A stretch of 36,059 nucleotides of DNA. Source: Octopus bimaculoides. Lineage: Eukaryota. A program made the translations under genes and the position numbers. Under the pieces are notes generated by a model. That model did not search any database and was not told the origin of the DNA. It saw only the letters and a program-made list of their open reading frames with translations. The stretch is taken from positions 27,148,284 through 27,184,342 of the forward strand of contig NC_068997.1 in NCBI RefSeq assembly GCF_001194135.2, in the 5' to 3' direction. Below are positions 9,301 through 35,825 of this stretch, piece by piece (the stretch's first letter is position 1; every line of letters begins with the position of its first letter).

Positions 9301-12300
9301 AGCTATACAGCAAGAACAATGAAACATCACCTAAGAACTCTTTTGTTATTAACATACAACCATTCTTTTTGATAATTTATATTTAAAGTCTTGTTACATA
9401 CATTGTATCTTATTTGTGTCTCTCTCTTTCCACAGGACAATATACTGAATTCTATGTATCAGCTGTGGATTCTTGGTGCTTTAGACAACACAGGCATGCT
9501 TACACCACTTGGCCGTCAAATGGTAGAATTTCCTTTAGATCCTGCCTTATCAAAAATGCTTATAATTTCAATGGAGATGGAATGTAGTGCTGAAATTCTT
9601 GTAAGTATTCAAATTACTTATTTATCTTTTATGCTGCTGTTGTTGATGTTGTTATTATTATTATTATTAAGGTGGCAAGCTGGACAAAATACTTTGCGAT
9701 ATTTTGTCCATCTTTATGTTCTGGGTTCAAATTCTGCTGAGGTCAAATTTACCTTTCATCCTTTCAGGGTCAANNNNNNNNNNAATTTCAGACCTTGTGC
9801 CTATATCAGAAAGGATTATTGTTATTATTAAAGTGGTGAACTGGCAAAATCTTTAACACATAGGATTGAATACTAAGCAGCATTTTTTTTTTTGGCTCTT
9901 TATGTTCTGAGTTCGAACACCACTGTGGTTGACTTTACTTTCCATCCTTTCATTGTTGATAAAATAAAATATCAGTTGGACTCGGCAGGGGTTGATGTAA
10001 TTGACTTACCTCCTTCTCCGAAAATTGCTGGCCTTTTGCTGAAATTTGAAATCTTTATTTGTTGTACTCTAAAATTTTGTCCTAGTCAAACTTCTACATT
10101 ATTTACATTGAAGGTGATTTGACCGGGTGGTTAGAGTCTTGGATAGAATACCTCGTGGTATTTATTCTGAATCTTTGCACCCCAAGTTCAATTCCCACAG
10201 AGATCAACTTTACCTTCCATCCTTTAACCTTTTAGTATTTAAACTGGCCATTTCTGGCCTAAATATTCTACCTGTTTTATGTTCAAACTGGCCAGATTTG
10301 GCCACTCACACCTACCCTACAATGTCATTCTAAAAAAAATTATCACATCATCTGTTGCTCAAAACTATGAGATAATGTATGATTAAGTCAAAACAATGTA
10401 AATAAATCAGCATTACATTTGACAAAATTATCTGAATGCTAAAGGGATAAGGACCCCTCTCCCACCCTGGGTGGGGGAGGGGTCCTTATAAGATTTTGTT
10501 GCTAAAATTTATGTGCATTAAGTTGGTTATACTTCTACAATACACAAAATAGTTTAACAGTTTTTTTTTTTATATAATTCCTAAGATTATTTAATTACAA
10601 AAATATAATGGGATTTTTTAAACATTGAATGGCTAGGACAATCCATCTGAAGGGAATAAGAATCAAAGAGGTCTGTAGGTAAAAAATGGTTGAGAACCAC
10701 TGCTTTAAGGGGTGGATAAAATAGTGTAACAGTCCAGTGCAGTGGATTGGTAGAACTTTGGGGTAAGATACCTTGTAGTGTTTGTTCAGCCTTTTTGTGT
10801 TTTGAATTCAAATCCCACTATGACCTATTTGGAGTATGAAACTTAATTTGTCATCTAGCTTACTTGATGACATTAGTCGTTGGGTGCCTTTAGCAGGGTC
10901 CCTTCCATTGCAAGCATTCAGGTTAGATCTCTGATTTAAAGATAACTCCCTCTCTCCCGCTTGTCTTGAAGGTCTTGCCTTGCTCCTGTTGATTAGAAGA
11001 TAAAAAATAATGTATGAAAAAATATAAAAATAAAGAGAAAATTTAAAAGGAATATTTTTATTTTAGATTTATTATTAATTTTTTTTTCTGTAGTAAAATT
11101 CTTCCTTAAATGTTCTAATGTAATCTTTTGGCATTCAAAAGTGCTGAGTTCTGTTATAAAGATTGTGAATTTTGTTCAAACTGGTTTTTTTTATGACCTT
11201 TTTCAAGAGGTTACCATGTATTGCATCCAACCACTCTCTGTTTTTAATATTCAGGAAATCACATTTTATTTTATCATTTCATCATGAATGCATCAACTTA
11301 ATCTAACACCAGTCACTATCATGAAATGAAGAGGAAGGAGACCTTAGACAAGACTCTCTACTCTATATGCATACATTGTTTTTACATCTGACATTGTTAG
11401 TATTATGTATGGTGAAAGTTTAAACAAAAACAATTTTTGTATTCAATATCCACCAATGTTCTGACATAAAAGAAAATGTTTATAGATATGTAAGTTGGTT
11501 ATTGTTAGGATTTTCTGGAATTTCTACACTAGTTTGAGGTAGTTTCTCTACATTTTGATATTGTGAGCTTAATTTATCATCATCCGACTGAAACCCTTGA
11601 TTGTGATTTTCTTGTGGTGATGCCAGTTTAGCTGGTACTTTCTTGTCATTACTTTGCTGAAGATCAGATTTCTTTACTGGTTTTGTACTGATCTGCATAT
11701 CGCTGTTTAGTCTATGGTAGTTCCGATCTTTACACGTGATATAAATTAATCCAAAAACACAAGGTATTAATGCTAATAACCCTGCCACAATTCCTGTTAT
11801 TATGTTTACATCCTTCATGAAAACACTGATACATTTTTTTGAAATGATATCATCATCTCTGTCCAGAGCATTGACACATATGTGGTACGTGACAAATGCA
11901 GAGTCAGTATCAAAGGAATACTCATGTTCGTATTTCAGTGTAATGTCCTCGATCTGGTTTTCTGATGAGTCACTGATCGAAACATGGAAGCTATTCACAA
12001 TCAAACTTGTCATCCATTTAATTCTCACTCGGCCTTTCTCAATTTCGGTGCTAACATTCAAATTGGAAGAAGCATCAGAGTTGATATTTGGATTCCAGTT
12101 GTCACAAGTTTGGGGCTGGCATTTTAATTCCAAACTATTAATGAGTGCTTTGTCTATCTCTTTGCTGGAATTCCTGCAGGTCTTGATGTGAACTGAAGAA
12201 CCATACATGTTTATAATTGAATTCAAATGACAGTTACAAGGCAGAGAATTATGCTCAAGGTTTAAATTTTGGATGTCTTTTAGATTGTGGAATGGACACT

Positions 12301-15300
12301 GATCAATTTCCTGTAGTGAACAGTTACTCAAGTCAAAGTTTTTCAAATGGTACGGCAAACGGAGAGAGTTTATAGATTTTGTCATATTGTTTCCTTGTAG
12401 AGAAAAATTTTTCAATGATAAAAGTTGAATGAAAGCATCTGACGAAATCTCGGTCAGTTTATTATGACCGAGGTCAAGTTCATTAAGGTTTAACGGGACT
12501 TCACTGAACATATTTTTTGATAGGGTTTGAATTAAATTTTCAGACAGATCCAAACTGTTGAGCTTAGAAAGGGACAAGTGGCCATAAATTGTTTGAATTT
12601 GATTTTTTGATAAATTCAAACTTGAAAGATTTTTTAGATTGCTAAATGTTTTCAGTTTGATCTGTTTTAATTTGTTATTAGACAAATCCAGTTTTTCCAG
12701 ATTTGGACAATCCTGGAAAAGGCTGTCAGAAAGTTCCTGTATTTTGTTATTTTGTAGATGTAGATGTAGGCTGTTTGTTACTATTGGCTTGGTTAGATAA
12801 ATAATTTCATTCGAACTGATATCTAGTGTTTGCCATTTTGGGTAGCTGAGTAAACTGTAAGGAAGATCTAACAACTTGTTGTTGGATACATTTAGTCCTT
12901 GAAGATTGGGCATCGACCCGAGGTTGATAAGTATGGTATCATTTTGGTTTTGAGTGAAATTTAGTTGCAGGATAGTGTTGTTAGTAATTGAAATAGAGGA
13001 AATATTATTATATGACAGTTGAAAGAAGGTGACATTGCTGTAGGTACAGTTGAAGCATTTCAAGTTCATAAAGTCTGGTGAATAATTCAAAATATATGAT
13101 GTTGTTAATGTAGCGCCAAACAGCCAAGTAACAATCAGTGCATGTCGCAGCATTTTTCTGTAGAATGGTATCTGCTGGAATAAAAAAAACCCAAAATAGT
13201 TGAAAAATAAAAAACAGTTATATGATAGAAGAGCAGAATGAAATAAGTGGAGCAAAAGCACACACAAAGATGAAAAGTGTTATTGAAGAGGTCACAGATG
13301 TGTGATGAAAGATTTCCAGACAATGGACATGAGTTAGAATAAGAACAGCAATAAACCAGTGAAGAACAAATATATAGTGCATGTGTTTATTTTTATGTGG
13401 CACAAGCACCCATGAGCCCACAAGATTAGGATCACTTGGCTGAAGAGGAATACAGGGGACATACCTGTATGTAAGGACAACCACAATTTTACTTAGCTTG
13501 ACGTGTCATATATATTGTTGCATATATGTACATATATATATATATTACTTGTTTCACTTATTTGACTGCAGCTATGCTGGAGTGCCACCTTTAGTTGAAC
13601 AAATTGACCCTAGGGCTTATTCTTTGTAACCCTAGTACTTATTCTATCTGTTTCTTTTGCTGAACCACTAAGTTATGGGGATGTAAACAAACCAAGGTCA
13701 GTTGTCAAGCAATGGTGCGGGGACAAACATAGAAACAAACACACAAATATATACTTTATATATATTGCCAGAAACACTTCTGGTCTTTATTACTTTCCCA
13801 TTCTTCTTGTGTTTTGTAGCTTTAATACAACTCACGTGTCCCTTGTACAGTTGATAATCCTTGGTAGCTTCTAAATGCCCAAATGTGTGTACCCTTGTCT
13901 TGACATTATGTAATAATTGCAAATGCACATCAGTATCATACAAGTGTCTTTCATTTCTAGTCTTTCAAGGAAAACATCTCAGGTAATGAGGAAATATTAC
14001 CATGCTTGGAAACAGGTGAGGGTTGATGACAGGAAGGGCATCCAGCCACAAAATAGTCTGCCTCAGTGAATTCCATCTAATCCATGCAACCATTGAAGAG
14101 TGGATGTTAAATGATGATGATGTTGATTGTATATATGGCTGTAGGGTTATAAAGTTCACTTTGGAACCATGTGGCTTAAGAGTTCATTCCCAATATGTTG
14201 ATACTATCAGCTGCTATCTTTTATTGTAGCTGTGGGTTGACCAGAGCCTTGTGAGTGAAATTAATTAGATAGAAACAAGAAGAAGCCTTTCATATATTCA
14301 TACACACACACACACACACACACACATTATAGATATATGTTCATTTAATGTTTGCTTTTCCATATTAGCATGGAATGGGTTAATTACTTGAAGTAGTATT
14401 TTATAGCCAGACTAACTAATTTCAGATTAGAGGCATGCATGTGCGTGTTTGTGTATTTCCTTTGTCTTGACTTGTACGTGGTGATTGTAAACAAAGGTCA
14501 GTTAAAACCACTTTTCATTTGTTTGCAATCCTCCATGAAATTATGTCTCACCAATGAGTCATTTGTCGTTCAAAAGATGGGGAAATATCAACCCTGAATG
14601 GAACACCAGTCTATCACAAGGTTACTCATTTTTGCCAGTTGAGTGAACTGGAACAACATGACATGAAGTCTTTTGCTCAAGAACACAATGCACTACCCGG
14701 TATGGGAATCAAAATCATGATTTTGCGATCATGAATGCAATCCCCTAACCACTAGGCCATGCGCCTTCACTCAAATTTGTTTATTGTAATTTTATTTTAC
14801 CTTCAAACACAAAGATTATAAAAGAAATAGTTTATGATAATACAAAACACACTTGTACATTTAACGAACACTTTAAAACAGAGGCATGGCTGTGTGGTAA
14901 GAAGCTTGCTTCCCAACCACATGGTTCTGGGTTAAGTCCTATTGTGTGGCGCCTTATGCAAGTGTCTTCTACAGTAGCCTTGGACTGACCAAAGCCTTGT
15001 GAGTGGATTTGGTAGACGGAAACTGACAGAAGCTTGTCGTATAGATATGTATATATTCATGTGTGAGTGTCTTTCTGTCTGTGTTCCCCCACCATTGTTT
15101 AATAACCGATGTTGGTGTGTTTATGTTCCCATCAATCGAGCAGTTTAGATAAAGACACCGATAGAATAAGTACCAGGCTTACAATGAATAAGTCCTGGGG
15201 TCGATTNNNNNNNNNNNNNNNNNNNNNNNNNNNNNNNNNNNNNNNNNNNNNNNNNNNNNNNNNNNNNNNNNNNNNNNNNNNNNNNNNNNNNNNNNNNNNN

Positions 15301-18300
15301 NNNNNNATATATATATATATATATATATATACACACGCATATGTATGTATGTGTGTGTGTATACATCTATACCTATAGGTGTACATACATCTACATAAGC
15401 ATATGCAGAAGGGCGAGGATATATGGAGAAATTGCATAACACCTAGAATAAAGATCCGGTTGATAAAAGGCTGGTATTGGCTCAAAGTAGCTAAATTGTC
15501 CTCTAGAATTCACATTTCAGTTGAGACTTAACAGCACTCTTATTGTTTGCTGTTGTCCAAAACAACCGGATTTTCAATATTTACAAAAGATGCCACAAAG
15601 AAAGGAACAAAAACTGAGAAAGTGAAAGAAGCCAAGCAAGAGGAGATTAACGAAAGAAAGCAAAAGGGACAAAGAAGTATATAACAAATGACAATATCTA
15701 CTACATATGTGTGTTTGTAGCATTGTTAACTAACTCCTCCTACATCGTTTTATTGATTTTGATGAAACTTGACACGCAAGTAGAACTCATGTCTGGAAAC
15801 CTCATGGCATACTCAGATTGTTGAAAAACATTGATAATATGGTCCCTGGAAGGGACCATTATATCTACCTCATATAACTAATTTTTTTAAGCACCCAAGG
15901 GAAATAACCCATAGCACCTGTATAATATTTTTTTTAAACACTCAAGGGAAATAACCCATTTCATTGTTTATGAATTGAATTCGATTACTTTGAATATTGA
16001 TTTTTCTTGTGTCCTATTTCTAATTTTTGCAGACAATATCATTTGACATGTGAGTAGAACTCATGTCTGGAAATCTTGTAAAAATCAATAATAGGGCACT
16101 TCCAATGGATCCTTCTATCTACTACATATTACTAATATTTTATTTAAGCAACCCTAGGGAAATAACTCTTACCACCTGCAGAAGCAATCAATATTTGATT
16201 CTCATACTCAGCCGACCTATATATATATATATATATATATAATTATTATAAGATCTGGTAATTAGTCATATATTAATATATTAATTAATATCGATTAATT
16301 ATCAGGGGGCCAGCACATTTAAAGAATCAAAGAAATTCAGAAATATTATCTGCAATCTCAGGGGATTAAGGTACATTTTAAAAATAACGTCGACCACTAA
16401 CGTGGACAATTAATGTGCTAGAAATAGATCACATTTTGTGTCTATTAAGACCTAAAAAGTTCTCAACATGAAATATAGCAGCATACCAAAAACGTGAGCG
16501 GGCAAGACATTTAAAATCACCTAAAAAAATCATTATTAAACAGGAACCAGGTTTCAGATTTAACAAATTCTTACCATTTGTCTATTCCTCATCAGCCTGA
16601 TTTGTAATGTAGCAGCAATTATCAGAATCGTATGTATAGTTGCCCACTGCCATGGGTGTGCGTGCATATGGTTCTGCTAATTACAGCTTAATGGTAAAGT
16701 TCAAAAGTCTTCGTTTTGGCGCGCTAATTTCAGGAATATATCTGCAGAAACTATTTACTGCGTCGAATATATTCAGAATGAGAACATGAGTATGGGTAAA
16801 TATTATTATAAGATCTGGTAATTAGTCATATATTAATATATTAATTAATATCGATTAATTATCAGGGGGCCAGCACGTTAGTGGTCGACGTTAGTGGTCG
16901 ACGTTAGTGGTCGACGTTATTTTTAAAATGTACCTTAATCCCCTGAGATTGCAGATAATATTTCTGAGTCTCTTTGATTCTTTAAATGTGCTGGCCCCCT
17001 GATAATTAATCGATATTAATTAATATATTAATATATGACTAATTACCAGATCTTATAATAATATTTACCCATTACTCATGTTCTCATTCTGAATATATTC
17101 GACGCAGTAAATAGTTTCTGCGGATATATTCCTGAAATTAGCGCGCCAAAACGAAGTCTTTTGAACTTTACCATTAAGCTGTAATTAGCAGAACCATATG
17201 CACGCACACCCATGGCGGTGGGCAACTATACNNNNNNNNNNNNNNNNNNNNNNNNNNNNNNNNNNNNNNNNNNNNNNNNNNNNNNNNNNNNNNNNNNNNN
17301 NNNNNNNNNNNNNNNNNNNNNNNNNNNNNNNNNNNNNNNATATATATATATATATAGTAATAAATGAATAGCTGAATCACTACCAGAACTAGAGTACTTC
17401 CAGGTGTGGAAGCAAGGTCTAGAATCAAAGGGCCTTAGAGTTAACCTAGCAAAAACCAAAGTCTTAGTAAGTAGGAAGGCAGACAAATCACAAATCCCTT
17501 CAGGTAGATGGCCCTGCTTGATCTGTAGAAAAAGCATAGGTAGAAACTCGATAAGATGCACCCAGTGTAAGCTTTGGACACAAAAGGTGCAGCAATATCA
17601 GAGGAAGGTTAACAGGGAATATTGCTATTGTGTGTGTGGAAGATGCATAAGTACAATAAACACCAAACATGCACAGAAAATAGACTCCATCAACTGCCAG
17701 CAGGGATAAAGCTAGAGGTAGTAGATAGCTTCTGTTATCTAGGTAATAAAATTAGTAGCAGAGGTGGATGTGCCGAGACCATAATTGTGAGAATAAGATA
17801 AGGTTGGGCAAAGTTCAGAGAGCTCCTCCCTCTACTGGCAACAAAGGGCTTCTCTCTCAGAGTGAAAGACAGATTGTATGGTGCCTGTGTGCAAACAGCT
17901 ATGCTACATAGCAGTGAAACATGGGCTGTGACAGATGAGGACATGCGTAGGCTTGAAAGAAATGAAGCTAGTATGCTTCGCTGGATGTGCAATGTCGGTG
18001 TGCATGTTCGACAGACTGTAAGCATCTTGAGAGAAAAGTTGGGAATAAGAGGCATCAGATGTGGTGTGCAAGAGAGACAACTGCACTTGTATAGTCATGT
18101 GATGCGTATGGACGAGAACAGCTGTGTAAAGAAGTGCCGATCTCTAACTGTGGAGGGAACCTGTGGTAGAGGTAGACCCAGAAGACATGGGATGAGCTGG
18201 TGAAGCATGATCTTCAAACTTTGGGCCTCACAGAAGCAGTGAGTAGTCCCCAAGATTTTTGAGGATGTGCTGTGCTTGAGAAGACCTGTCAAGCCAAGTG

Positions 18301-19897
18301 AAATCGTAGGCATAGCTGATGCTGGTGTCACGTTACTGGCACGTAAAAAGCACCTTTCAGGCATTCGGTCTCATGGAGGCATAGTGGCTGAGCTCCTTTC
18401 AAGCATTTGGCCTCATCGAGGCAATGACCGAGACCTTTGGCATTATGCCGTACTTGAGAAGAAGACCCATCAAGCTGAGCAAAACCACAGTTGTGGCAGA
18501 TACCAGTGTCATACAAATGGTACCCATGTCGGCAGCACATAAAAGCACCTATTACACTCTTCTGAGTGGTTGGCATTAGGAAGGGCATCCAACTGTAGAA
18601 ACCATGCCAAATTGGACTGGAGTTTTGTGCAGGCTTCCAACTTGCCTGTCCTGGTCAAACTGTCCAACCCATGCCAGCATGGACAATGGATGTTAAATGG
18701 TGATGATGATGATGATGATGTTGGGTTACTAAATCATTGCTGAATTTCTCTATTGATGACTGCTAGCCCTCAATGTGCCTACTAAATAATGTGTTTTCCA
18801 TCAGTTTATCAAATTGGCTCATCACAAAATCTCATGTGTGACATATACAGATCCTCCTATTTGCATGAACCATTAAACAACAATAGTGACAACAGCACTA
18901 CTTGAACAGGTTCTACATTCTCTCAGCCATGGCTTGTTTTAGTGATATTAAAATTATACTCGGGTTTAGACCTGGGTCCCATATATGTGTGACCTGGTAA
19001 TAAATGTGTGTGTGTGTGTGTTTGTGTTTGTTTGTGTGCGTGTATGATACAGTTTATAAAATGTAGGTGACTGCTACTTGTCTTCTCATTGTTAATAAAG
19101 TGAAAATATGTGGAACTTATTAAAAACTCTAGTCAGAGGCAGTCAATGATGTCTATGAAAAGAAAGCAATGTGCAAAGGTGTTAGCATGTGATTAAATAT
19201 GCTGTTCTGGTTGATAAAGTAAGTAGGTATGTATTGTAGTTAGTCAAAAGGTGAGCTGGAGGTATGTAATCACTAAATATAAAGGACAAACTACGTTGGT
19301 GCATGTTAAGCACTTTTGAGGCAGTAAATAAGCTTATGGAGGCAGTTTTGGCTGCTATATTTTGTAGGTCAAACTACTACACAGAAACTGTCTTGCTTGT
19401 GTGGCCCCTATTTTATATACAGGTATTTATCAAGGAGATTGAGTAATTTTTTCTTGGGTTGTGCAGCCCATATTTTGAAACTAGATGGGTATTTAGTGAG
19501 TGAGATTGATCAAGCTTTTTACTGGGTTGTGTGGCCCTTATTTTGAAAACAGTAGGATGTTTAGCGTGGTGAATTGAGCAAATCTTTTTCTGGGTTGCAT
19601 GGTCCCTGTTATGAAAACACTTTAGAGTTTATTGAGAGAGATTGATTTTTCTTTTTATTGGATTGTATGATATCTGTTTTGAAAACAATTGAGAATTTAT
19701 CAAGGGAAGCTAAGTTTATCACTGGTTTGTATGGTTCCTGTTTTAAAGGAATATTCTTTGTGTTTGCTTTGAAGGGTTTTTGTCAAACAAATTGAGTCCA
19801 GGACTTATTTTTCATTTTTTCAAGAGTCTGGATACTTATTCTTAAGTTCACTACTTGTTTGTTTGGTCCCTGTTTTAAAGGAATCTTCTTTAAATTT

Positions 19898-34400: not shown

Positions 34401-35825
34401 GCCATGTGGGAAGATGAATGGAGGCTTAAGGAGTTCTTTTCTTATCAGAACAATCAGTGTGAGTTTTCTGAGCTGCTGTACCGCATTATTTATGGGATGA
34501 CCCAATATTTTACATTTCATACTTTATGTTTTACATTCATTATATCAATGATATTTACCAATTATTTTTGTTGCTTCAGGGCATTGGAGAATATGTTAAC
34601 TGCCGAACGGGGATGCCATGTCACTTACACCCTACCAGTGCCCTCTTTGGCATGGGCTACAATCCTGACTATATTGTCTACCATGAATTGGTTATGACAT
34701 CCAAGGTAAAATATTCACATGCTGACACTCTTGAACAAACTTTGTTAATTTATTTCATTGCATTGTATTTTATTTGTTGAGTTATTTTTCTCCCTGACTG
34801 GTCACCCTTGCCAAAGCTTACTTGTAAGAAAGGGTCCAAGTAAGAAAGCATTCGGATTACTCTGTATAACAAAATTAAGATTTTTTTTTGCCTTTGGTCA
34901 GTAAGTGTTATTTCCTATTTGCTTCTATCTAGAAATCAAACAAAATGACTACTGTTCCCTTCAGACTTTGCTTTTGTAACCTGAGACACCGATGTTTTGA
35001 AACTGACCTATTTTTCCATTACATTTCAAACAGATTCAGCACTGAGTTGCTGAAGCAGAAATATCATTATAGCAAATATTCTGCTCAATACCACAGATTT
35101 GCCTGTCAGTTGTTTAACCACAACCACTTGAGTATGTCCCTTGGTGGCTGATGATATGAGCAGGAGTAGTTGGAGGAGCACCATAGCCATATATTGAGAG
35201 GGATTCTTTGGGGTTTGAGTAAATGTAACAAAAGCAAAGTTTGAAGGAAATATTAGCCATTCTTTCAATATTTTCTAGGGGTAAGCAAATAGGAAATAAC
35301 AGTTGCTACCCACGGACAAAAGTCATATTGCACAGTGTTATTTTTTTACAGTTTTGAATTAACCCTTTAGCATTCAGATTACTCTGTTAAATGTAATACT
35401 TATTTATTAATATTGTTTTCAATTAATCATGCATTATCTCACCACCATCTCTACCACTAACACTATCACCACCAGTACCACCATCGTCAACCACTACTCC
35501 CACTTCTACCATAACAACCATCATTACTACCACTGTTCTCCACCACCACCGCCACCATTCTTGTCGCCATCACTTCCACCATAGCCACAATGATAACTAC
35601 CATCACTATCACAATCACCATCACCACAACCAATGCCACTCACAACCATTGCCACCAACAGCACTTACCACCACCACCACCACCACCACCACCACTTGGT
35701 ATTAACCTTATCTGTTTCTTTTATTACAGGAATACATGCAATGTGTAACTGCTGTGGATGGTCAGTGGCTAGCAGAGATGGGACCAATGTTTTATACAAT
35801 TAAGGACTCGACAAAGTCAAGACAG
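729..35825 (+). CDS. DHX38: Pre-mRNA splicing factor ATP-dependent RNA helicase PRP16 (DHX38), partial; 10 exons: 729-884, 1295-1395, 2125-2171, 8533-8695, 9436-9600, 22747-22895, 27118-27172, 30465-30599, 34580-34705, 35730-35825
   Basis: The exons join in one frame through GT-AG introns with matching phases (1193 nt). Translation reads [16 protein letters not shown]...[22 protein letters not shown]...[12 protein letters not shown]...[14 protein letters not shown]...[10 protein letters not shown]...[12 protein letters not shown]...[23 protein letters not shown]. This closely matches PRP16/DHX38 as I recall it (motifs IV-VI, HA2, OB-fold). Confidence 0.97.
1295..1395 (+). CDS. DHX38: DHX38 exon ([34 protein letters not shown])
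   Basis: Acceptor ttccag at 1289-1294; donor CAG|GTAAGT. Confidence 0.96.
1525..1839 (-). mobile_element. Tc1-like transposon 5' fragment (TIR plus N-terminal HTH)
   Basis: The minus strand begins TA|CAGGGGTTGGACAAAATAATGGAAACACC and encodes RGQIVG...[26 protein letters not shown]. Confidence 0.7.
2125..2171 (+). CDS. DHX38: DHX38 exon (motif VI: [16 protein letters not shown])
   Basis: Acceptor ctag at 2121-2124; donor GG|GTAAGT; DEAH motif VI QRxGRAGR. Confidence 0.96.
2650..3710 (+). mobile_element. Degraded L2/CR1/Jockey-group LINE reverse transcriptase remnant, interrupted by a short repeat, (TC)n and a gap
   Basis: FWSLVKRI at about 2670; HPIPKRGNP at about 3355; [12 protein letters not shown]...[17 protein letters not shown]...[10 protein letters not shown] at 3501-3700, corresponding to RT motifs PIPKxG and LDISKAFDRVWH. 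Confidence 0.75.
3887..4090 (-). mobile_element. Short element matching the RTE 3' end, with (GAT)n tail
   Basis: CCATGCTGGCATGGGTTG...TTTCTATGGCTGGA is the reverse complement of the 18540-18720 RTE tail. Other copies: 2985-3130 (+), 8817-8995 (-), 14030-14125 (+), 28061-28150 (-). Confidence 0.7.
4615..4720. repeat. (CAT)n microsatellite
   Basis: Direct reading; explains the poly-Ile/poly-Met ORFs. Confidence 0.9.
5441..5794 (-). mobile_element. SINE family A, near full length with internal (CA)n
   Basis: Reverse complement of the 14881-15206 type; both modules present. Confidence 0.75.
5999..7573 (+). mobile_element. Non-autonomous Helitron (gap inside)
   Basis: 5' A|TC start (TCTATATATATAAAAATGAG) followed by (GTCT)n. 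3' hairpin ACCCG-GGCAACGT-CGGGT at 7545-7562, then CTAG|T at 7570-7574. No target-site duplication; inserted between A and T. Confidence 0.72.
6572..7339. other. Assembly gap (N run); other gaps near 3181, 9774, 15207, 17232, 22989, 30940, 32209, 32698
   Basis: Runs of n, mostly flanked by (TA)n, (CT)n or (CA)n. Confidence 0.99.
8533..8695 (+). CDS. DHX38: DHX38 exon ([10 protein letters not shown]...[18 protein letters not shown]...DPPPQ)
   Basis: Acceptor tttcag; donor CAG|GTAAGC; phase 2 entry matches the previous exon. Confidence 0.96.
9142..9250 (+). mobile_element. Possible mariner 5' terminal fragment
   Basis: CAAGGCGGTATCAAAAAGTTCCCAGACT and CAACAGATGGCAGCAC resemble mariner TIR/5' UTR motifs; recalled, not searched. 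Confidence 0.4.
9436..9600 (+). CDS. DHX38: DHX38 exon ([17 protein letters not shown]...[12 protein letters not shown]...AEIL; HA2 domain)
   Basis: Acceptor ccacag; donor CTT|GTAAGT; 55 codons. Confidence 0.96.
9669..10225 (+). mobile_element. Three head-to-tail copies of SINE family B
   Basis: AAGGTGGCAAGCTGG...GTTCTGGGTTCAAATTCTGCTGAGGTCAAATTTACCTTTCATCCTTT motif recurs at about 9670, 9830 and 10110; same family at 26606-26830. Confidence 0.7.
10224..10450. mobile_element. piggyBac-like MITE (TTAA-flanked, imperfect TIRs)
   Basis: Begins TTAA|CCTTTTAGTATTTA and ends TGAATGCTAAAGGG|ATAA. A homologous half copy starting TTAA|CCCTTTAGCATTCAGA is at 35359-35441, and a TIR fragment is at about 5791. 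Confidence 0.6.
11480..13153 (-). CDS. Nested single-pass LRR receptor/adhesion protein (signal peptide, about 12 LRRs, LRRCT, FN3-like, TM, 83-aa tail), 557 aa
   Basis: Uninterrupted ORF. Likely start is AAAAATG at 13153 ([19 protein letters not shown], a signal peptide). Repeated LxxLxLxxNxL motifs ([33 protein letters not shown]). LRRCT is NSLPCNC...C. FN3-like segment is VRIKW...YHICVNA. TM is [23 protein letters not shown]. About 14 NxS/T sequons. AATAAA candidate at 11270-11265. Confidence 0.9.
   Translation of the reverse strand: MLRHALIVTWLFGATLTTSYILNYSPDFMNLKCFNCTYSNVTFFQLSYNNISSISITNNTILQLNFTQNQNDTILINLGSMPNLQGLNVSNNKLLDLPYSLLSYPKWQTLDISSNEIIYLTKPIVTNSLHLHLQNNKIQELSDSLFQDCPNLEKLDLSNNKLKQIKLKTFSNLKNLSSLNLSKNQIQTIYGHLSLSKLNSLDLSENLIQTLSKNMFSEVPLNLNELDLGHNKLTEISSDAFIQLLSLKNFSLQGNNMTKSINSLRLPYHLKNFDLSNCSLQEIDQCPFHNLKDIQNLNLEHNSLPCNCHLNSIINMYGSSVHIKTCRNSSKEIDKALINSLELKCQPQTCDNWNPNINSDASSNLNVSTEIEKGRVRIKWMTSLIVNSFHVSISDSSENQIEDITLKYEHEYSFDTDSAFVTYHICVNALDRDDDIISKKCISVFMKDVNIITGIVAGLLALIPCVFGLIYITCKDRNYHRLNSDMQISTKPVKKSDLQQSNDKKVPAKLASPQENHNQGFQSDDDKLSSQYQNVEKLPQTSVEIPENPNNNQLTYL
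13549..13745 (-). mobile_element. SINE family A, 3' module
   Basis: TTGACTGCAGCTATGCTGGAG...TAGTACTTATTCTATC...GTTGTCAAGC, shared with 5441-5600 and 27466-27640. Confidence 0.65.
14598..14769 (-). mobile_element. tRNA-headed SINE (third family)
   Basis: Minus strand GGCGCATGGCCTAGTGGTTAGGG (A-box-like) followed by GCATTGTGTTCTTGAGCAAAA...; a related fragment lies at about 24900-24970 (+). Confidence 0.55.
14881..15206 (+). mobile_element. SINE family A (tRNA-derived head, microsatellite, second module)
   Basis: CATGGCTGTGTGGTAAGAAGCTTGCTTCCCAACCACATGGTTCTGGGTT...GACCAAAGCCTTGTGAGTGGATTTGGTAGACGGAAACTGA, with at least 8 related copies in the window. Confidence 0.75.
16242..17231. mobile_element. 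Hammerhead-bearing non-coding retroelement (Penelope-like pLTR or retrozyme) with partial-tandem and inverted structure
   Basis: 75-bp direct repeat 16242-16316 = 16802-16876 (560-bp period). Inverted copy 16988-17231 of 16634-16876 (3 mismatches and 1 indel). 16877-16987 is the inverse of 16317-16403 with a triplicated 13-mer. Flanked by (TA)n on both sides; the right end runs into a gap. Confidence 0.65.
16531..16609 (-). ncRNA. Putative minimal type I hammerhead ribozyme
   Basis: The minus strand reads CAUUA-C-AAA-U-CAGG CUGAUGA GGA AUA GACAAAU GGUAAGA AUUUGUU AAA UCU GAAA C CUG GU U / CCUG UUU AA UAAUG. It has the core CUGAUGA and GAAA, helix I (CAGG/CCUG, AAA/UUU, CAUUA/UAAUG), a helix II hairpin, a 2-bp palindromic helix III (ACCUGGU) and a GUU cleavage triplet. 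Folded by hand only. Confidence 0.7.
17368..18720 (+). mobile_element. 5'-truncated RTE-clade LINE remnant (end of RT, Cys-rich finger, C-terminal region, 3' UTR, (GAT)n tail)
   Basis: Broken frames read IAESLPELE...[64 protein letters not shown]. The element ends in (GAT)n at 18701-18720. Confidence 0.88.
19395..19760. repeat. Degenerate minisatellite, unit about 68 bp, 5-6 copies
   Basis: The TGG(G/A/T)TTG...TTTTGAAAAC core recurs at 19456, 19524, 19592, 19660 and 19724 (spacings 68, 68, 68, 64). Confidence 0.8.
20266..20620 (+). mobile_element. SINE family A, diverged full-length copy
   Basis: Head at 20266, second module ending in CAGCATGGCTGTAGTTCAATGATTGAAAC plus an A-rich tail. Confidence 0.65.
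22350..22620. repeat. Degenerate (GATA)/(GACA)n microsatellite
   Basis: Direct reading; explains the low-complexity ORFs at 22110-22713. Confidence 0.85.
22747..22895 (+). CDS. DHX38: DHX38 exon ([20 protein letters not shown]...[18 protein letters not shown])
   Basis: Long pyrimidine tract plus ctag; donor GG|GTGAGT. Not in the ORF track; read by hand. Confidence 0.95.
23095..23680 (+). mobile_element. Mariner-like (maT, reconstructed DD37D) transposase 3' half pseudogene
   Basis: Frameshifted VITSDGD.MPPFIFPH.RLNT...[17 protein letters not shown]...SAPCH...WLSDNF...[16 protein letters not shown]. Ends in the TIR-like aatttagatgacaatttattcac. Confidence 0.85.
25760..26130 (-). mobile_element. 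Related maT/mariner transposase central fragment
   Basis: [45 protein letters not shown], homologous to the GVITSDGDxMPP segment of the other copies. Confidence 0.75.
26606..26830 (+). mobile_element. SINE family B copy
   Basis: Same head and ...GGGGTCAATGTAATTGACT...AAATTTCAGGCCTTGTGCC tail ending in (ATT)n. Confidence 0.7.
27118..27172 (+). CDS. DHX38: DHX38 exon ([18 protein letters not shown])
   Basis: Acceptor ctgtag; donor AAG|GTGAGT; phases match the flanking exons. Confidence 0.94.
27466..27640 (-). mobile_element. SINE family A, 3' module
   Basis: Same motifs as 13549-13745. Confidence 0.6.
29456..29619 (-). mobile_element. SINE family A, head module
   Basis: GCTTTGGTTGAC...GAAGACAATTTTCCCAAGGCACTGTGCTGTGGGACTGAAC...CTTAACCACACAG. 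Further head fragments lie at 442-543 (-), 4129-4255 (+) and 24270-24455 (+). Confidence 0.65.
30465..30599 (+). CDS. DHX38: DHX38 exon ([16 protein letters not shown]...[10 protein letters not shown])
   Basis: Acceptor tttcag; donor AAG|GTAAGC; 45 codons. Confidence 0.96.
31780..32620. repeat. (ACC)n-rich low-complexity array with about 200-bp internal duplication
   Basis: ACAACATCACTTA.CTAG.CACTGCACTCCC occurs three times; a 105-bp block at 32104-32208 is repeated at 32306-32410. Confidence 0.8.
32970..33236. repeat. Degenerate 15-16 bp tandem repeat (GGTTACCTGTTGCCAT-like)
   Basis: Recurrent GTTGCCATGGTTAC-like units. Confidence 0.75.
33874..34426 (-). mobile_element. Second copy of the same maT/mariner 3' half, in opposite orientation
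   Basis: [46 protein letters not shown] (ORF 34266-34520). TA plus TIR CAGGGGGCGGTGAATAAACTGTCATCTAAATT at 33874. Clearly alignable by eye to 23140-23680. Confidence 0.87.
34580..34705 (+). CDS. DHX38: DHX38 exon ([24 protein letters not shown]...YHELVMTSK; OB-fold)
   Basis: Acceptor cttcag; donor AAG|GTAAAA; 42 codons. Confidence 0.96.
35359..35441. mobile_element. Partial copy of the piggyBac-like MITE
   Basis: Reverse complement aligns to about 10367-10450. Confidence 0.6.
35440..35695. repeat. (ACC)n-rich tract just upstream of the last visible exon
   Basis: Direct reading. Confidence 0.85.
35730..35825 (+). CDS. DHX38: DHX38 exon ([32 protein letters not shown])
   Basis: Acceptor ttacag; donor CAG|GTCAGT; 32 codons. 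Confidence 0.95.

What the first reader, a model, noticed from the sequence alone, without database searches (positions are those of the whole stretch)
16531..16609. Minimal type I hammerhead ribozyme with a palindromic helix III inside a DHX38 intron
Seen in sequence: on the minus strand the catalytic boxes CUGAUGA (16595-16589) and GAAA (16555-16552) are correctly spaced. They are joined by a 33-nt helix II (GGA/UCU base; GACAAAU/AUUUGUU stem). The tiny helix III, A-C-[CUG]-G-U, is a self-complementary ACCUGGU. A GUU triplet predicts cleavage between 16545 and 16544. Helix I extends over 12 bp (CAGG/CCUG, AAA/UUU, CAUUA/UAAUG). Established knowledge: minimal type I hammerheads with short palindromic helix III occur in Penelope-like element pLTRs and metazoan non-LTR retrozymes, and they cleave as dimers in tandem transcripts. 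Inference: this is a young self-cleaving-RNA retroelement family in this genome, possibly undescribed. It lies antisense to DHX38 and sense to the nested LRR gene about 3.4 kb away. The G-U closing pair, AUA/AAA loop and GUU triplet may indicate a partly decayed copy.
Basis: partly seen in the sequence, partly recalled or inferred. Interest (0 to 1): 0.82.

Follow-up and report, generated by a model that had tools for sequence, protein, structure and literature searches.

The report
Hammerhead-like motif in an octopus retroelement
A short sequence in an Octopus bimaculoides intron has all the conserved bases of a self-cleaving hammerhead ribozyme and sits inside a mobile-element-like repeat, so it is probably one more example of a known kind of ribozyme-carrying retroelement, but neither a repeat family nor cleavage could be shown here.

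Summary
On the minus strand, 16609-16531 carries CUGAUGA, GAAAC and GUU in the right order. The three helices are as described. My own descriptor finds this site and no other in the window. Chance expectation is 0.005-0.009 per window.

The window is Octopus bimaculoides, in a DHX38/PRP16 intron. The motif lies on the sense strand of a 560-nt unit (16242-16801). Two more-than-unit-length arrays of this unit meet head-to-head. Their 3' ends face (TA)n, and one array runs into an assembly gap. This matches the published architecture of Penelope-like element (PLE) insertions. The unit RNA is unusually self-paired (z = -3.9).

Against the ribozyme reading:
- No Rfam hammerhead model matches, even at E<=10.
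- Position 10.1-11.1 is G-U, and the extra base after A9 typical of PLE hammerheads is missing.
- The hammerhead fold is not the minimum-free-energy fold.
- The motif-bearing segment occurs once, so covariation cannot be tested.
- No other genomic copy could be retrieved.

Verdict: probably a genuine hammerhead of a PLE-derived, retrozyme-like element (about 0.55). It would be a new member of a known kind. Interest is moderate to low.

The parts
16531..16609 (-). Candidate type I hammerhead. Helix I 5' strand 16609-16596; CUGAUGA 16595-16589; helix II 16588-16556; GAAA 16555-16552; helix III 16552-16546; H17 = U16545 (predicted cut between 16545 and 16544); helix I 3' strand 16544-16531.
   Evidence: Read directly. 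Pairs listed. Only descriptor hit in the window. No Rfam hammerhead match.
16242..16801 (-). One full 560-nt repeat unit in the sense orientation of the motif, GC 33%. The motif occupies unit positions 193-271, with the predicted cut after position 257.
   Evidence: Repeat analysis. Unit RNA folds with z = -3.9 on the sense strand and -2.8 on the antisense strand.
16802..16879 (-). 78-nt 5'-truncated unit (the last 78 nt of the unit) directly upstream of the full unit. This creates the head-to-tail junction TTATAATAAT|ATTTACCCAT.
   Evidence: 99% identical to 16242-16319.
16888..17231 (+). Inverted second array: unit positions 386-560, then the next unit's positions 1-168. It crosses the same head-to-tail junction and ends at an assembly gap 25 nt before the motif would start.
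   Evidence: 334/344 identical to a tandem dimer of the unit.
16875..16919 (.). Head-to-head junction of the two arrays, with 3.5 copies of a 13-mer (ACGTTAGTGGTCG). The other copy of this segment has about 1.5 copies. CCAGCAC/CTAGCAC microhomology occurs at the join.
   Evidence: Tandem Repeats Finder; inverted repeat I4; sequence.
16218..16241 (.). (TA)12 microsatellite abutting the 3' end of the left array; presumed target site.
17232..17339 (.). Assembly gap (run of N) that hides the rest of the right array, including any second hammerhead.
17340..17356 (.). (AT)n tract right after the gap; presumed other half of the microsatellite target.

Best explanation
The motif is the hammerhead domain of a non-coding, roughly 560-nt retroelement of the Penelope-like element (PLE) / non-LTR retrozyme kind in Octopus bimaculoides.

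Inferred mechanism:
1. A more-than-unit-length transcript, from a tandem copy, carries two hammerhead copies.
2. Their short helix III strands (ACCUGGU) pair with each other to form a double hammerhead.
3. Each copy is cut after U16545 (GUU), releasing a unit-length RNA that can be ligated into a circle.
4. A PLE reverse transcriptase/endonuclease supplied in trans nicks both strands of a (TA)n target.
5. It primes cDNA synthesis on the UA-rich stretch UUAUAAUAAU of the tandem or circular template.
6. It copies more than one unit from each side, and the two cDNAs meet head-to-head.

Shown: the motif, its helices, the unit, the two arrays, their shared head-to-tail junction, the (TA)n flanks and the high self-pairing of the unit RNA.

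Inferred: transcription, cleavage, circularisation, the PLE enzyme, and the existence of other copies.
For: - The conserved core bases and A15.1-U16.1 are present and H17 is not G, matching CUGANGA/GAAAY/RUH.
- It is the only descriptor hit in the window, with chance 0.005-0.009 per window. The distal helix II stem is better than 98% of shuffles.
- The double-hammerhead fold is -25.9 kcal/mol against -13.0 for two monomer hammerheads.
- The motif is the only CUGANGA...GAAA pair in the roughly 1-kb element. It lies on the strand whose 3' ends face outward to (TA)n and whose 5'-truncated ends meet in the middle, as target-primed reverse transcription on both strands predicts.
- PLE insertions are described as partial tandems with an adjacent inverted 5'-truncated copy and a microsatellite, often (TA)n, preference (PMC8557442). 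A PLE enzyme cleaves and extends both target strands in vitro (PMC11167929).
- The unit is AT-rich (33% GC) and strongly self-paired (z = -3.9, 0 of 100 shuffles), like retrozyme RNAs (PMC7229834).
- A non-G-C pair at 10.1-11.1 occurs in a documented retrozyme hammerhead: axolotl HHR_Amex2 has U-U.
- Octopus genomes do carry PLE-type minimal hammerheads at (TA)n. Two were found in the O. sinensis orthologous locus.
Against: - No Rfam hammerhead covariance model matches at gathering score, nor at E<=10, even when only 111 nt are searched.
- Position 10.1-11.1 is G-U rather than the highly conserved G-C. There is no extra nucleotide between A9 and 10.1. Helix II has only a 3-bp base before a 3x3 internal loop. 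No loop-loop tertiary motif is recognisable.
- GUU is an unusual cleavage triplet.
- The local fold is not better than shuffles (z = -0.69). The hammerhead fold (-6.5 kcal/mol) is far from the minimum free energy (-15.3).
- The segment 16417-16633 is single-copy in the window, so no conservation or covariation test was possible.
- No other copy was found in the O. sinensis orthologous 21.7 kb, in protein-space searches of the unit's ORFs, or in metagenome and viral collections.
- The 560-nt unit is longer than the 170-400 nt reported for invertebrate retrozymes.
- No PLE ORF was seen in the window.
Confidence: 0.55

Rival explanations
1. The repeat is a real retroelement insertion of PLE type, for instance derived from a Naiad-like PLE. 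Those target (TA)n and lack canonical hammerheads. On this reading the hammerhead-like motif is fortuitous or a dead remnant and does not cleave.
For: - Naiad PLEs prefer (TA)n, occur in Octopus spp., and lack canonical HHRs, although some carry the bare catalytic boxes (PMC8557442).
- No Rfam hammerhead match.
- Two PLE minimal-hammerhead hallmarks are missing.
- The hammerhead fold is thermodynamically disfavoured.
- The bare descriptor would hit hundreds of times by chance genome-wide.
Against: - The chance of a descriptor hit inside a given 560-nt unit on one strand is about 6e-5 at the simulated rate of 1e-7 per nt.
- The hit lies on the inferred sense strand.
- Its helix III is nearly palindromic, as in real dimer-acting hammerheads.
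Confidence: 0.3
2. The structure is not a retroelement. It is a local DNA-level duplication/inversion, a fragment of a satellite or foldback sequence, or a short-read assembly artefact. The motif inside it is a chance match.
For: - The element sits in a 1.9-kb contig bounded by two N gaps in a short-read-based assembly.
- The A segment contains its own AT-rich palindrome.
- No target-site duplication can be read, because both flanks are (TA)n.
- No second locus was found.
Against: - Both arrays cross the same head-to-tail junction at different truncation points. They differ at about 3% of positions, so they are distinct sequences rather than a collapsed repeat.
- 3' ends facing outward and 5'-truncated ends meeting inward is what reverse transcription from both target strands gives.
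- Both strands of the unit fold better than all shuffles.
Confidence: 0.12
3. The motif is a box C/D snoRNA-like element: C box UGAUGA (16594-16589), D box CUGA (16557-16554), and a terminal stem CAGG (16599-16596) / CCUG (16551-16548).
For: With lax thresholds the only Rfam matches on this stretch are weak C/D-box snoRNA families (SNORD82, snoU2_19, sR7, snoZ278; 11-14 bits, E 0.85-7.5).
Against: - All scores are far below the gathering thresholds of 36-43 bits.
- The C-to-D span is only about 52 nt, and no C'/D' boxes were noted in reading the sequence.
- It is antisense to its host intron (DHX38), so it would not be released by splicing.
- It lies inside a repeated mobile-element-like unit.
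Confidence: 0.02

Closest known systems
Metazoan non-LTR retrozymes (Cervera & de la Pena 2020, PMC7229834)
   Same: A non-coding, AT-rich repeat unit arranged head-to-tail. It carries a type I hammerhead with a short, nearly palindromic helix III expected to act as a dimer. The unit RNA is highly self-paired. A weak 10.1-11.1 pair has a precedent in axolotl HHR_Amex2.
   Different: - The unit is 560 nt, against 170-400 nt in invertebrates.
- Only one full unit plus partial units is visible, not a multimer array.
- Helix II is 33 nt with an internal loop, instead of about 4 bp plus a loop.
- No loop 1 / loop 2 tertiary motif is recognisable.
- The cleavage triplet is GUU.
- Helix III is an odd-length near-palindrome (central U-U), not a perfect even one as in the four published constructs.
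- Rfam models do not match.
Minimal hammerheads of Penelope-like elements (Cervera & de la Pena 2014, PMC4209133)
   Same: A long helix II, a short helix I next to the core, palindromic 15.2-16.2 / loop 3, expected dimeric action, and location in an element with tandem and inverted copies.
   Different: - It lacks the extra nucleotide between A9 and 10.1.
- It lacks the G10.1-C11.1 pair.
- No RT/GIY-YIG ORF lies between repeats in the window.
- The bona fide-looking octopus examples in O. sinensis (L002 19391 and 19252) have both hallmarks and share no other sequence with this candidate.
Naiad-clade Penelope-like elements (Craig et al. 2021, PMC8557442)
   Same: (TA)n insertion preference, tandem/inverted insertion structures that trouble short-read assemblies, and a reported presence in Octopus spp.
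   Different: Naiads are reported to lack canonical hammerheads, and cephalopod Naiads are described as old remnants. Here the two arrays are 97% identical and a complete hammerhead consensus is present.
Amphibian satellite 2 / newt hammerhead (dimer-acting type I HHR)
   Same: A very weak helix III that becomes a stable helix only between two copies in a tandem transcript.
   Different: The amphibian motifs have the canonical 4-bp helix II and conserved loop-loop contacts. The repeats are about 330 bp, in very large arrays.

Membership tests
Hammerhead ribozyme, type I | Conserved core C3 U4 G5 A6 N7 G8 A9 / G12 A13 A14 / A15.1-U16.1 / H17 not G, in type I order | tested here: met
   CUGAUGA 16595-16589; GAA 16555-16553; A16552-U16546; U16545. 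Matches CUGANGA/GAAAY/RUH.
Hammerhead ribozyme, type I | Three helices around the core, with helix I open | tested here: met
   Helix I 4+3+5 bp, helix II 3+7 bp, helix III 2 bp. Only descriptor hit in the window.
Hammerhead ribozyme, type I | Match to a curated hammerhead covariance model (Rfam release 15) | tested here: not met
   No hammerhead family was reported at gathering score or at E<=10 on 601 nt or 111 nt.
Hammerhead ribozyme, type I | G10.1-C11.1 pair closing helix II | tested here: not met
   G16588 pairs with U16556 (G-U). Precedent for a weak pair: axolotl HHR_Amex2 U-U.
Hammerhead ribozyme, type I | Tertiary contact between loop 1 (or a helix I bulge) and loop 2 | tested here: inconclusive
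   No canonical loop motifs. A bulged U in helix I and the AUA/AAA internal loop in helix II could interact, but nothing tests this.
Hammerhead ribozyme, type I | Self-cleavage at the predicted site | not testable with these tools
   Needs in vitro transcription of monomer and dimer.
PLE minimal hammerhead (Cervera & de la Pena 2014) | Unpaired nucleotide between A9 and 10.1 | tested here: not met
   Helix II pairs directly from G16588. A register with a bulged G breaks the next pair.
PLE minimal hammerhead (Cervera & de la Pena 2014) | Palindromic positions 15.2-16.2 and loop 3 | tested here: met
   ACCUGGU gives 6 intermolecular pairs around one U-U. The double hammerhead is 13 kcal/mol better than two monomers.
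PLE minimal hammerhead (Cervera & de la Pena 2014) | Consensus families in the genome with covariation in the helices | not testable with these tools
   The octopus genome cannot be searched by DNA here. Indirect routes found nothing.
PLE minimal hammerhead (Cervera & de la Pena 2014) | Location in pseudo-LTRs flanking an RT / GIY-YIG ORF | tested here: not met
   The unit's longest ORF is 49 aa, with no relatives. The neighbouring ORFs tested gave no RT or GIY-YIG Pfam hit. A non-autonomous derivative remains possible.
Non-LTR retrozyme | Head-to-tail repeats, each with a type I hammerhead (at least two consecutive HHR-bearing units in the criterion of bioRxiv 10.64898/2026.07.22.740005) | tested here: inconclusive
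   The head-to-tail junction is seen twice. Only one unit shows the motif: the 78-nt partial unit lacks that region, and the second array enters a gap 25 nt before it.
Non-LTR retrozyme | Low GC, non-coding, highly self-paired unit RNA | tested here: met
   GC 33%. No ORF over 49 aa. z = -3.9.
Non-LTR retrozyme | Expression as unit-length circular RNA | not testable with these tools
   Needs RNA-seq back-junction reads or divergent-primer RT-PCR.
PLE-type insertion | Partial tandem plus adjacent inverted 5'-truncated copy, in a microsatellite target | tested here: met
   Left array 78 + 560 nt. Right inverted array 175 + at least 168 nt. (TA)n on both outer sides. Compared with the descriptions.
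Box C/D snoRNA | Score above a family threshold, C/D and C'/D' boxes, sense orientation in the host intron | tested here: not met
   11-14 bits against thresholds of 36-43. Antisense to DHX38.

The most novel reading that the evidence does not exclude
Octopus bimaculoides carries an active retrozyme family with an unusually long (about 560-nt) unit and a divergent hammerhead: a 33-nt interrupted helix II, G-U at 10.1-11.1, a GUU cleavage site and an odd-length helix III palindrome. It cleaves as a dimer and yields abundant circular RNAs. It would be the first such family described in cephalopods, and it tolerates an intronic, antisense position.
Probability: 0.2. Interest if true: 0.5.

Novelty: new member of a known kind. 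Interest (0 to 1): 0.33.

Why it matters
If real, it extends ribozyme-bearing PLE/retrozyme elements to cephalopods. It also adds a hammerhead variant that the current Rfam models miss, which would help widen search descriptors. It would give a candidate source of small circular RNAs in octopus tissues. It would not change the general picture, since hammerheads in PLEs and retrozymes are already known across most animal phyla. If the motif is fortuitous, the locus is simply a PLE-like insertion in an intron.

Tried and rejected
1. Rfam cmscan on the whole window, on 601 nt and on 111 nt gave no hammerhead family. The only weak hits were C/D snoRNAs, rejected as far below threshold.
2. Finding other copies through protein space failed. 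The unit's 49-aa ORF gave no hit. A concatenation of all stop-free stretches of at least 14 aa in six frames also gave none.
3. The orthologous O. sinensis locus was fetched through the nested LRR gene. It holds no copy of the unit. Colinearity is lost beyond window 15206, so the empty site could not be located.
4. Exact-pattern scans gave nothing useful. The hammerhead pattern had 0 hits in metagenome contigs and 0 in viral contigs. A 22-mer from segment B hit one GC-rich contig (63% GC, probably bacterial) that shares only that 23-nt stretch, a chance match.
5. Thermodynamics does not discriminate. The local z-score is -0.69. The hammerhead fold is 9 kcal/mol above the minimum free energy. 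The double hammerhead is better than two monomers but still above the cofold minimum.
6. The tRNA/SINE-head idea failed: no tRNA in 15300-18800.
7. Pfam on neighbouring transposon-like ORFs gave no RT or GIY-YIG hit.
8. Supplementary files of the PLE papers, which might have held octopus consensus sequences, are not held as text.
9. A Helitron or TIR-transposon reading was considered and rejected from the sequence: the inverted repeats are internal, not terminal, and the ends lack TC...CTRR.
Full report
**Where the window comes from.** The nested single-exon LRR protein (window 11480-13153, minus strand) is encoded exactly on chromosome CM046617.1 of Octopus bimaculoides assembly GCA_001194135.2. 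The fetched locus is identical to the window. Plus-strand exon peptides match human PRP16/DHX38 best (E = 1e-119, against 1e-67 for DHX8). The candidate lies between exons at about 9.6 kb and 30.5 kb. It is therefore inside a DHX38 intron, antisense to DHX38.

**The observation.** Reading the minus strand confirms every element at the stated coordinates.
- Helix I is CAUUA/UAAUG, AAA/UUU and CAGG/CCUG.
- CUGAUGA is at 16595-16589.
- Helix II is 33 nt, with a G-U, G-C, A-U base, an AUA/AAA internal loop and a 7-bp distal stem.
- GAAA is at 16555-16552.
- Helix III has two base pairs and a CUG loop.
- The cleavage triplet is GUU, with a predicted cut between 16545 and 16544.

The motif fits the catalytic-centre consensus CUGANGA / GAAAY / RUH used by the de la Pena laboratory. 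ACCUGGU is only a near-palindrome. The four experimentally used retrozyme hammerheads in that supplement have perfect even-length palindromes: ACAGUACUGU, ACGCGCGU, ACACGUGU and ACAUGU.

**Chance.** I wrote a descriptor requiring CUGANGA, a helix II base of at least 3 bp, GAAA, a helix III of at least 2 bp with A15.1-U16.1, H17 not G, and a helix I of at least 4 bp.
- It finds this site and nothing else in the window.
- Simulated sequence of matching composition gives 0.005-0.009 sites per window, about 1e-7 per nucleotide per strand.
- With the descriptor positions kept and the rest randomised, 4-16% of versions fold the hammerhead shape as well.
- The motif is thus improbable in one window. 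A 2.3-Gb genome would still hold hundreds of bare chance hits, so context decides.

**Context.** The motif lies in a 560-nt unit (16242-16801). The arrangement is as follows.
- Read on the motif's strand, the left array is a 78-nt 5'-truncated unit (16879-16802) followed by the full unit. It ends at (TA)12 (16241-16218).
- The right array, on the other strand, starts at unit position 386. It crosses the same head-to-tail junction (TTATAATAAT|ATTTACCCAT) and runs to position 168 of the next unit. It then enters an assembly gap (17232-17339), which is followed by (AT)n.
- The two arrays are 97% identical (334/344).
- They meet head-to-head at 16880-16887, at a short microhomology and an expanded 13-mer.

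Published descriptions of Penelope-like element insertions match this: partial tandems, an adjacent inverted 5'-truncated copy, microsatellite and often (TA)n targets, and trouble in short-read assemblies (PMC8557442). A PLE enzyme cleaves and extends both target strands and initiates reverse transcription internally (PMC11167929). The orientation implied by this architecture, with 3' ends outward, agrees with the strand of the motif. The unit is 33% GC, has no ORF over 49 aa, and its sense RNA folds far better than shuffles (z = -3.9; antisense -2.8). These are properties reported for retrozyme RNAs. The motif is the only CUGANGA...GAAA pair in the element.

**Evidence against a working or canonical hammerhead.**
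- No Rfam hammerhead model matches, even at E<=10 on 111 nt.
- Of the four features that Cervera & de la Pena (2014) list as arguing against randomness of PLE minimal hammerheads, one is met: palindromic 15.2-16.2 / loop 3.
- Two are not met: the extra nucleotide after A9, and G10.1-C11.1.
- The fourth, covarying consensus families, could not be tested.
- A weak 10.1-11.1 pair does occur in the axolotl HHR_Amex2 hammerhead, which belongs to a documented retrozyme.
- The local fold is no better than shuffles (z = -0.69). The hammerhead fold is 9 kcal/mol above the minimum free energy.
- A double hammerhead is much better than two monomers (-25.9 against -13.0 kcal/mol) but still above competing folds.

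**Search for relatives.** The tools cannot search the octopus genome by DNA.
- Protein-space proxies for the unit found nothing.
- Metagenome and viral scans found nothing related.
- The O. sinensis orthologous 21.7 kb holds no copy of the unit. Colinearity is lost before the insertion site.
- The segment that holds the motif (16417-16633) is single-copy in the window.
- The claims of a family, of youth and of covariation therefore remain untested.
- Non-coding flanks are 84-94% identical between the two species, while the two arrays are 97% identical. By inference only, this suggests an insertion after the species split.

**A side finding that raises the prior.** In the O. sinensis locus, a 1,016-bp segment absent from O. 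bimaculoides contains two diverged, collinear elements of about 200 bp, head-to-head, each bounded by (TA)n.
- One carries UCUUU-CUGACGA-A-GAGUGUAGGCUC-GAAAUGUA-AAAGA.
- The other carries CCGACGA-A-GAGCUCCACUC-GAAACGUC.
- Both have the extra base after A9 and the G10.1-C11.1 pair. Their helix II loops differ while the stems are kept.
- The chance of such a hit in all the sequence scanned is about 0.003. This estimate is rough, because it rests on one random hit in 40 Mb.
- PLE-type hammerhead elements that target (TA)n therefore exist in Octopus. They belong to a different family from the candidate.

**Verdict.** The best reading is a hammerhead domain of a PLE-derived, retrozyme-like non-autonomous element (confidence about 0.55). 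The main rival is a fortuitous or dead motif in the same kind of element (about 0.3). Whether this copy cleaves is unknown. It would be a new member of a known kind, of moderate to low interest.

Noticed in passing
L002 18606-19621 (O. sinensis GCA_006345805.1, CM016875.1); motifs at L002 19391-19418 (+) and 19252-19226 (-): A 1,016-bp segment absent from O. bimaculoides (its flanks are contiguous at window 4244/4245). It holds two diverged elements of about 200 bp, head-to-head and each bounded by (TA)n. Each carries a PLE-type minimal hammerhead with an extra base after A9 and a G10.1-C11.1 pair. One has core CUGACGA with GAAAUGUA. The other has CCGACGA with GAAACGUC.
   Followed up: partly
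window 16548-16599 (-): The same bases can be read as a box C/D arrangement: stem CAGG, C box UGAUGA, D box CUGA, stem CCUG. This explains why the only weak Rfam hits are snoRNA families (11-14 bits, far below threshold).
   Followed up: yes
window 16875-16919 versus 16385-16410: A 13-mer (ACGTTAGTGGTCG) is present 3.5 times at the head-to-head junction, but only about 1.5 times in the other copy of the same segment. This is a copy-number difference between the two arrays.
   Followed up: partly
window 15757-16200: Two diverged copies (75-88% over the aligned 34-44-nt blocks) of a unit of about 270 bp lie directly left of the (TA)n target. No counterpart was found in the O. sinensis locus. Identity unknown.
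   Followed up: no
window 17404-18203 (+): ORFs resembling the C-terminal part of a LINE-type reverse transcriptase ([14 protein letters not shown], a Cys-rich finger, [16 protein letters not shown]) start right after the (AT)n tract. The resemblance is judged from memory. Pfam gave no hit.
   Followed up: partly
window 11480-13153 (-): The nested single-exon gene encodes a 557-aa LRR protein. Its O. sinensis orthologue (92% identical) is named 'toll-like receptor 6' by NCBI. Only LRR Pfam families are recorded for it, with no TIR domain.
   Followed up: no
window 18535-18719: A repeat of about 180 bp with several copies (76-82% identical) in the O. sinensis locus. Possibly a SINE (not tested).
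   Followed up: no
window 32083-32490 and 19448-19646: Other tandem repeats in the intron: a 202-bp unit x2 (82% matches, CAC/ACC-rich) and a 68-bp unit x2.9. No hammerhead core in them.
   Followed up: no
window 34266-34520 (-), 23077-23376 (+), 25775-26032 (-): ORF fragments with motifs such as [12 protein letters not shown] and DVMPPHIF. I would guess they are Tc1/mariner-type transposase remnants. Pfam gave no hit.
   Followed up: partly
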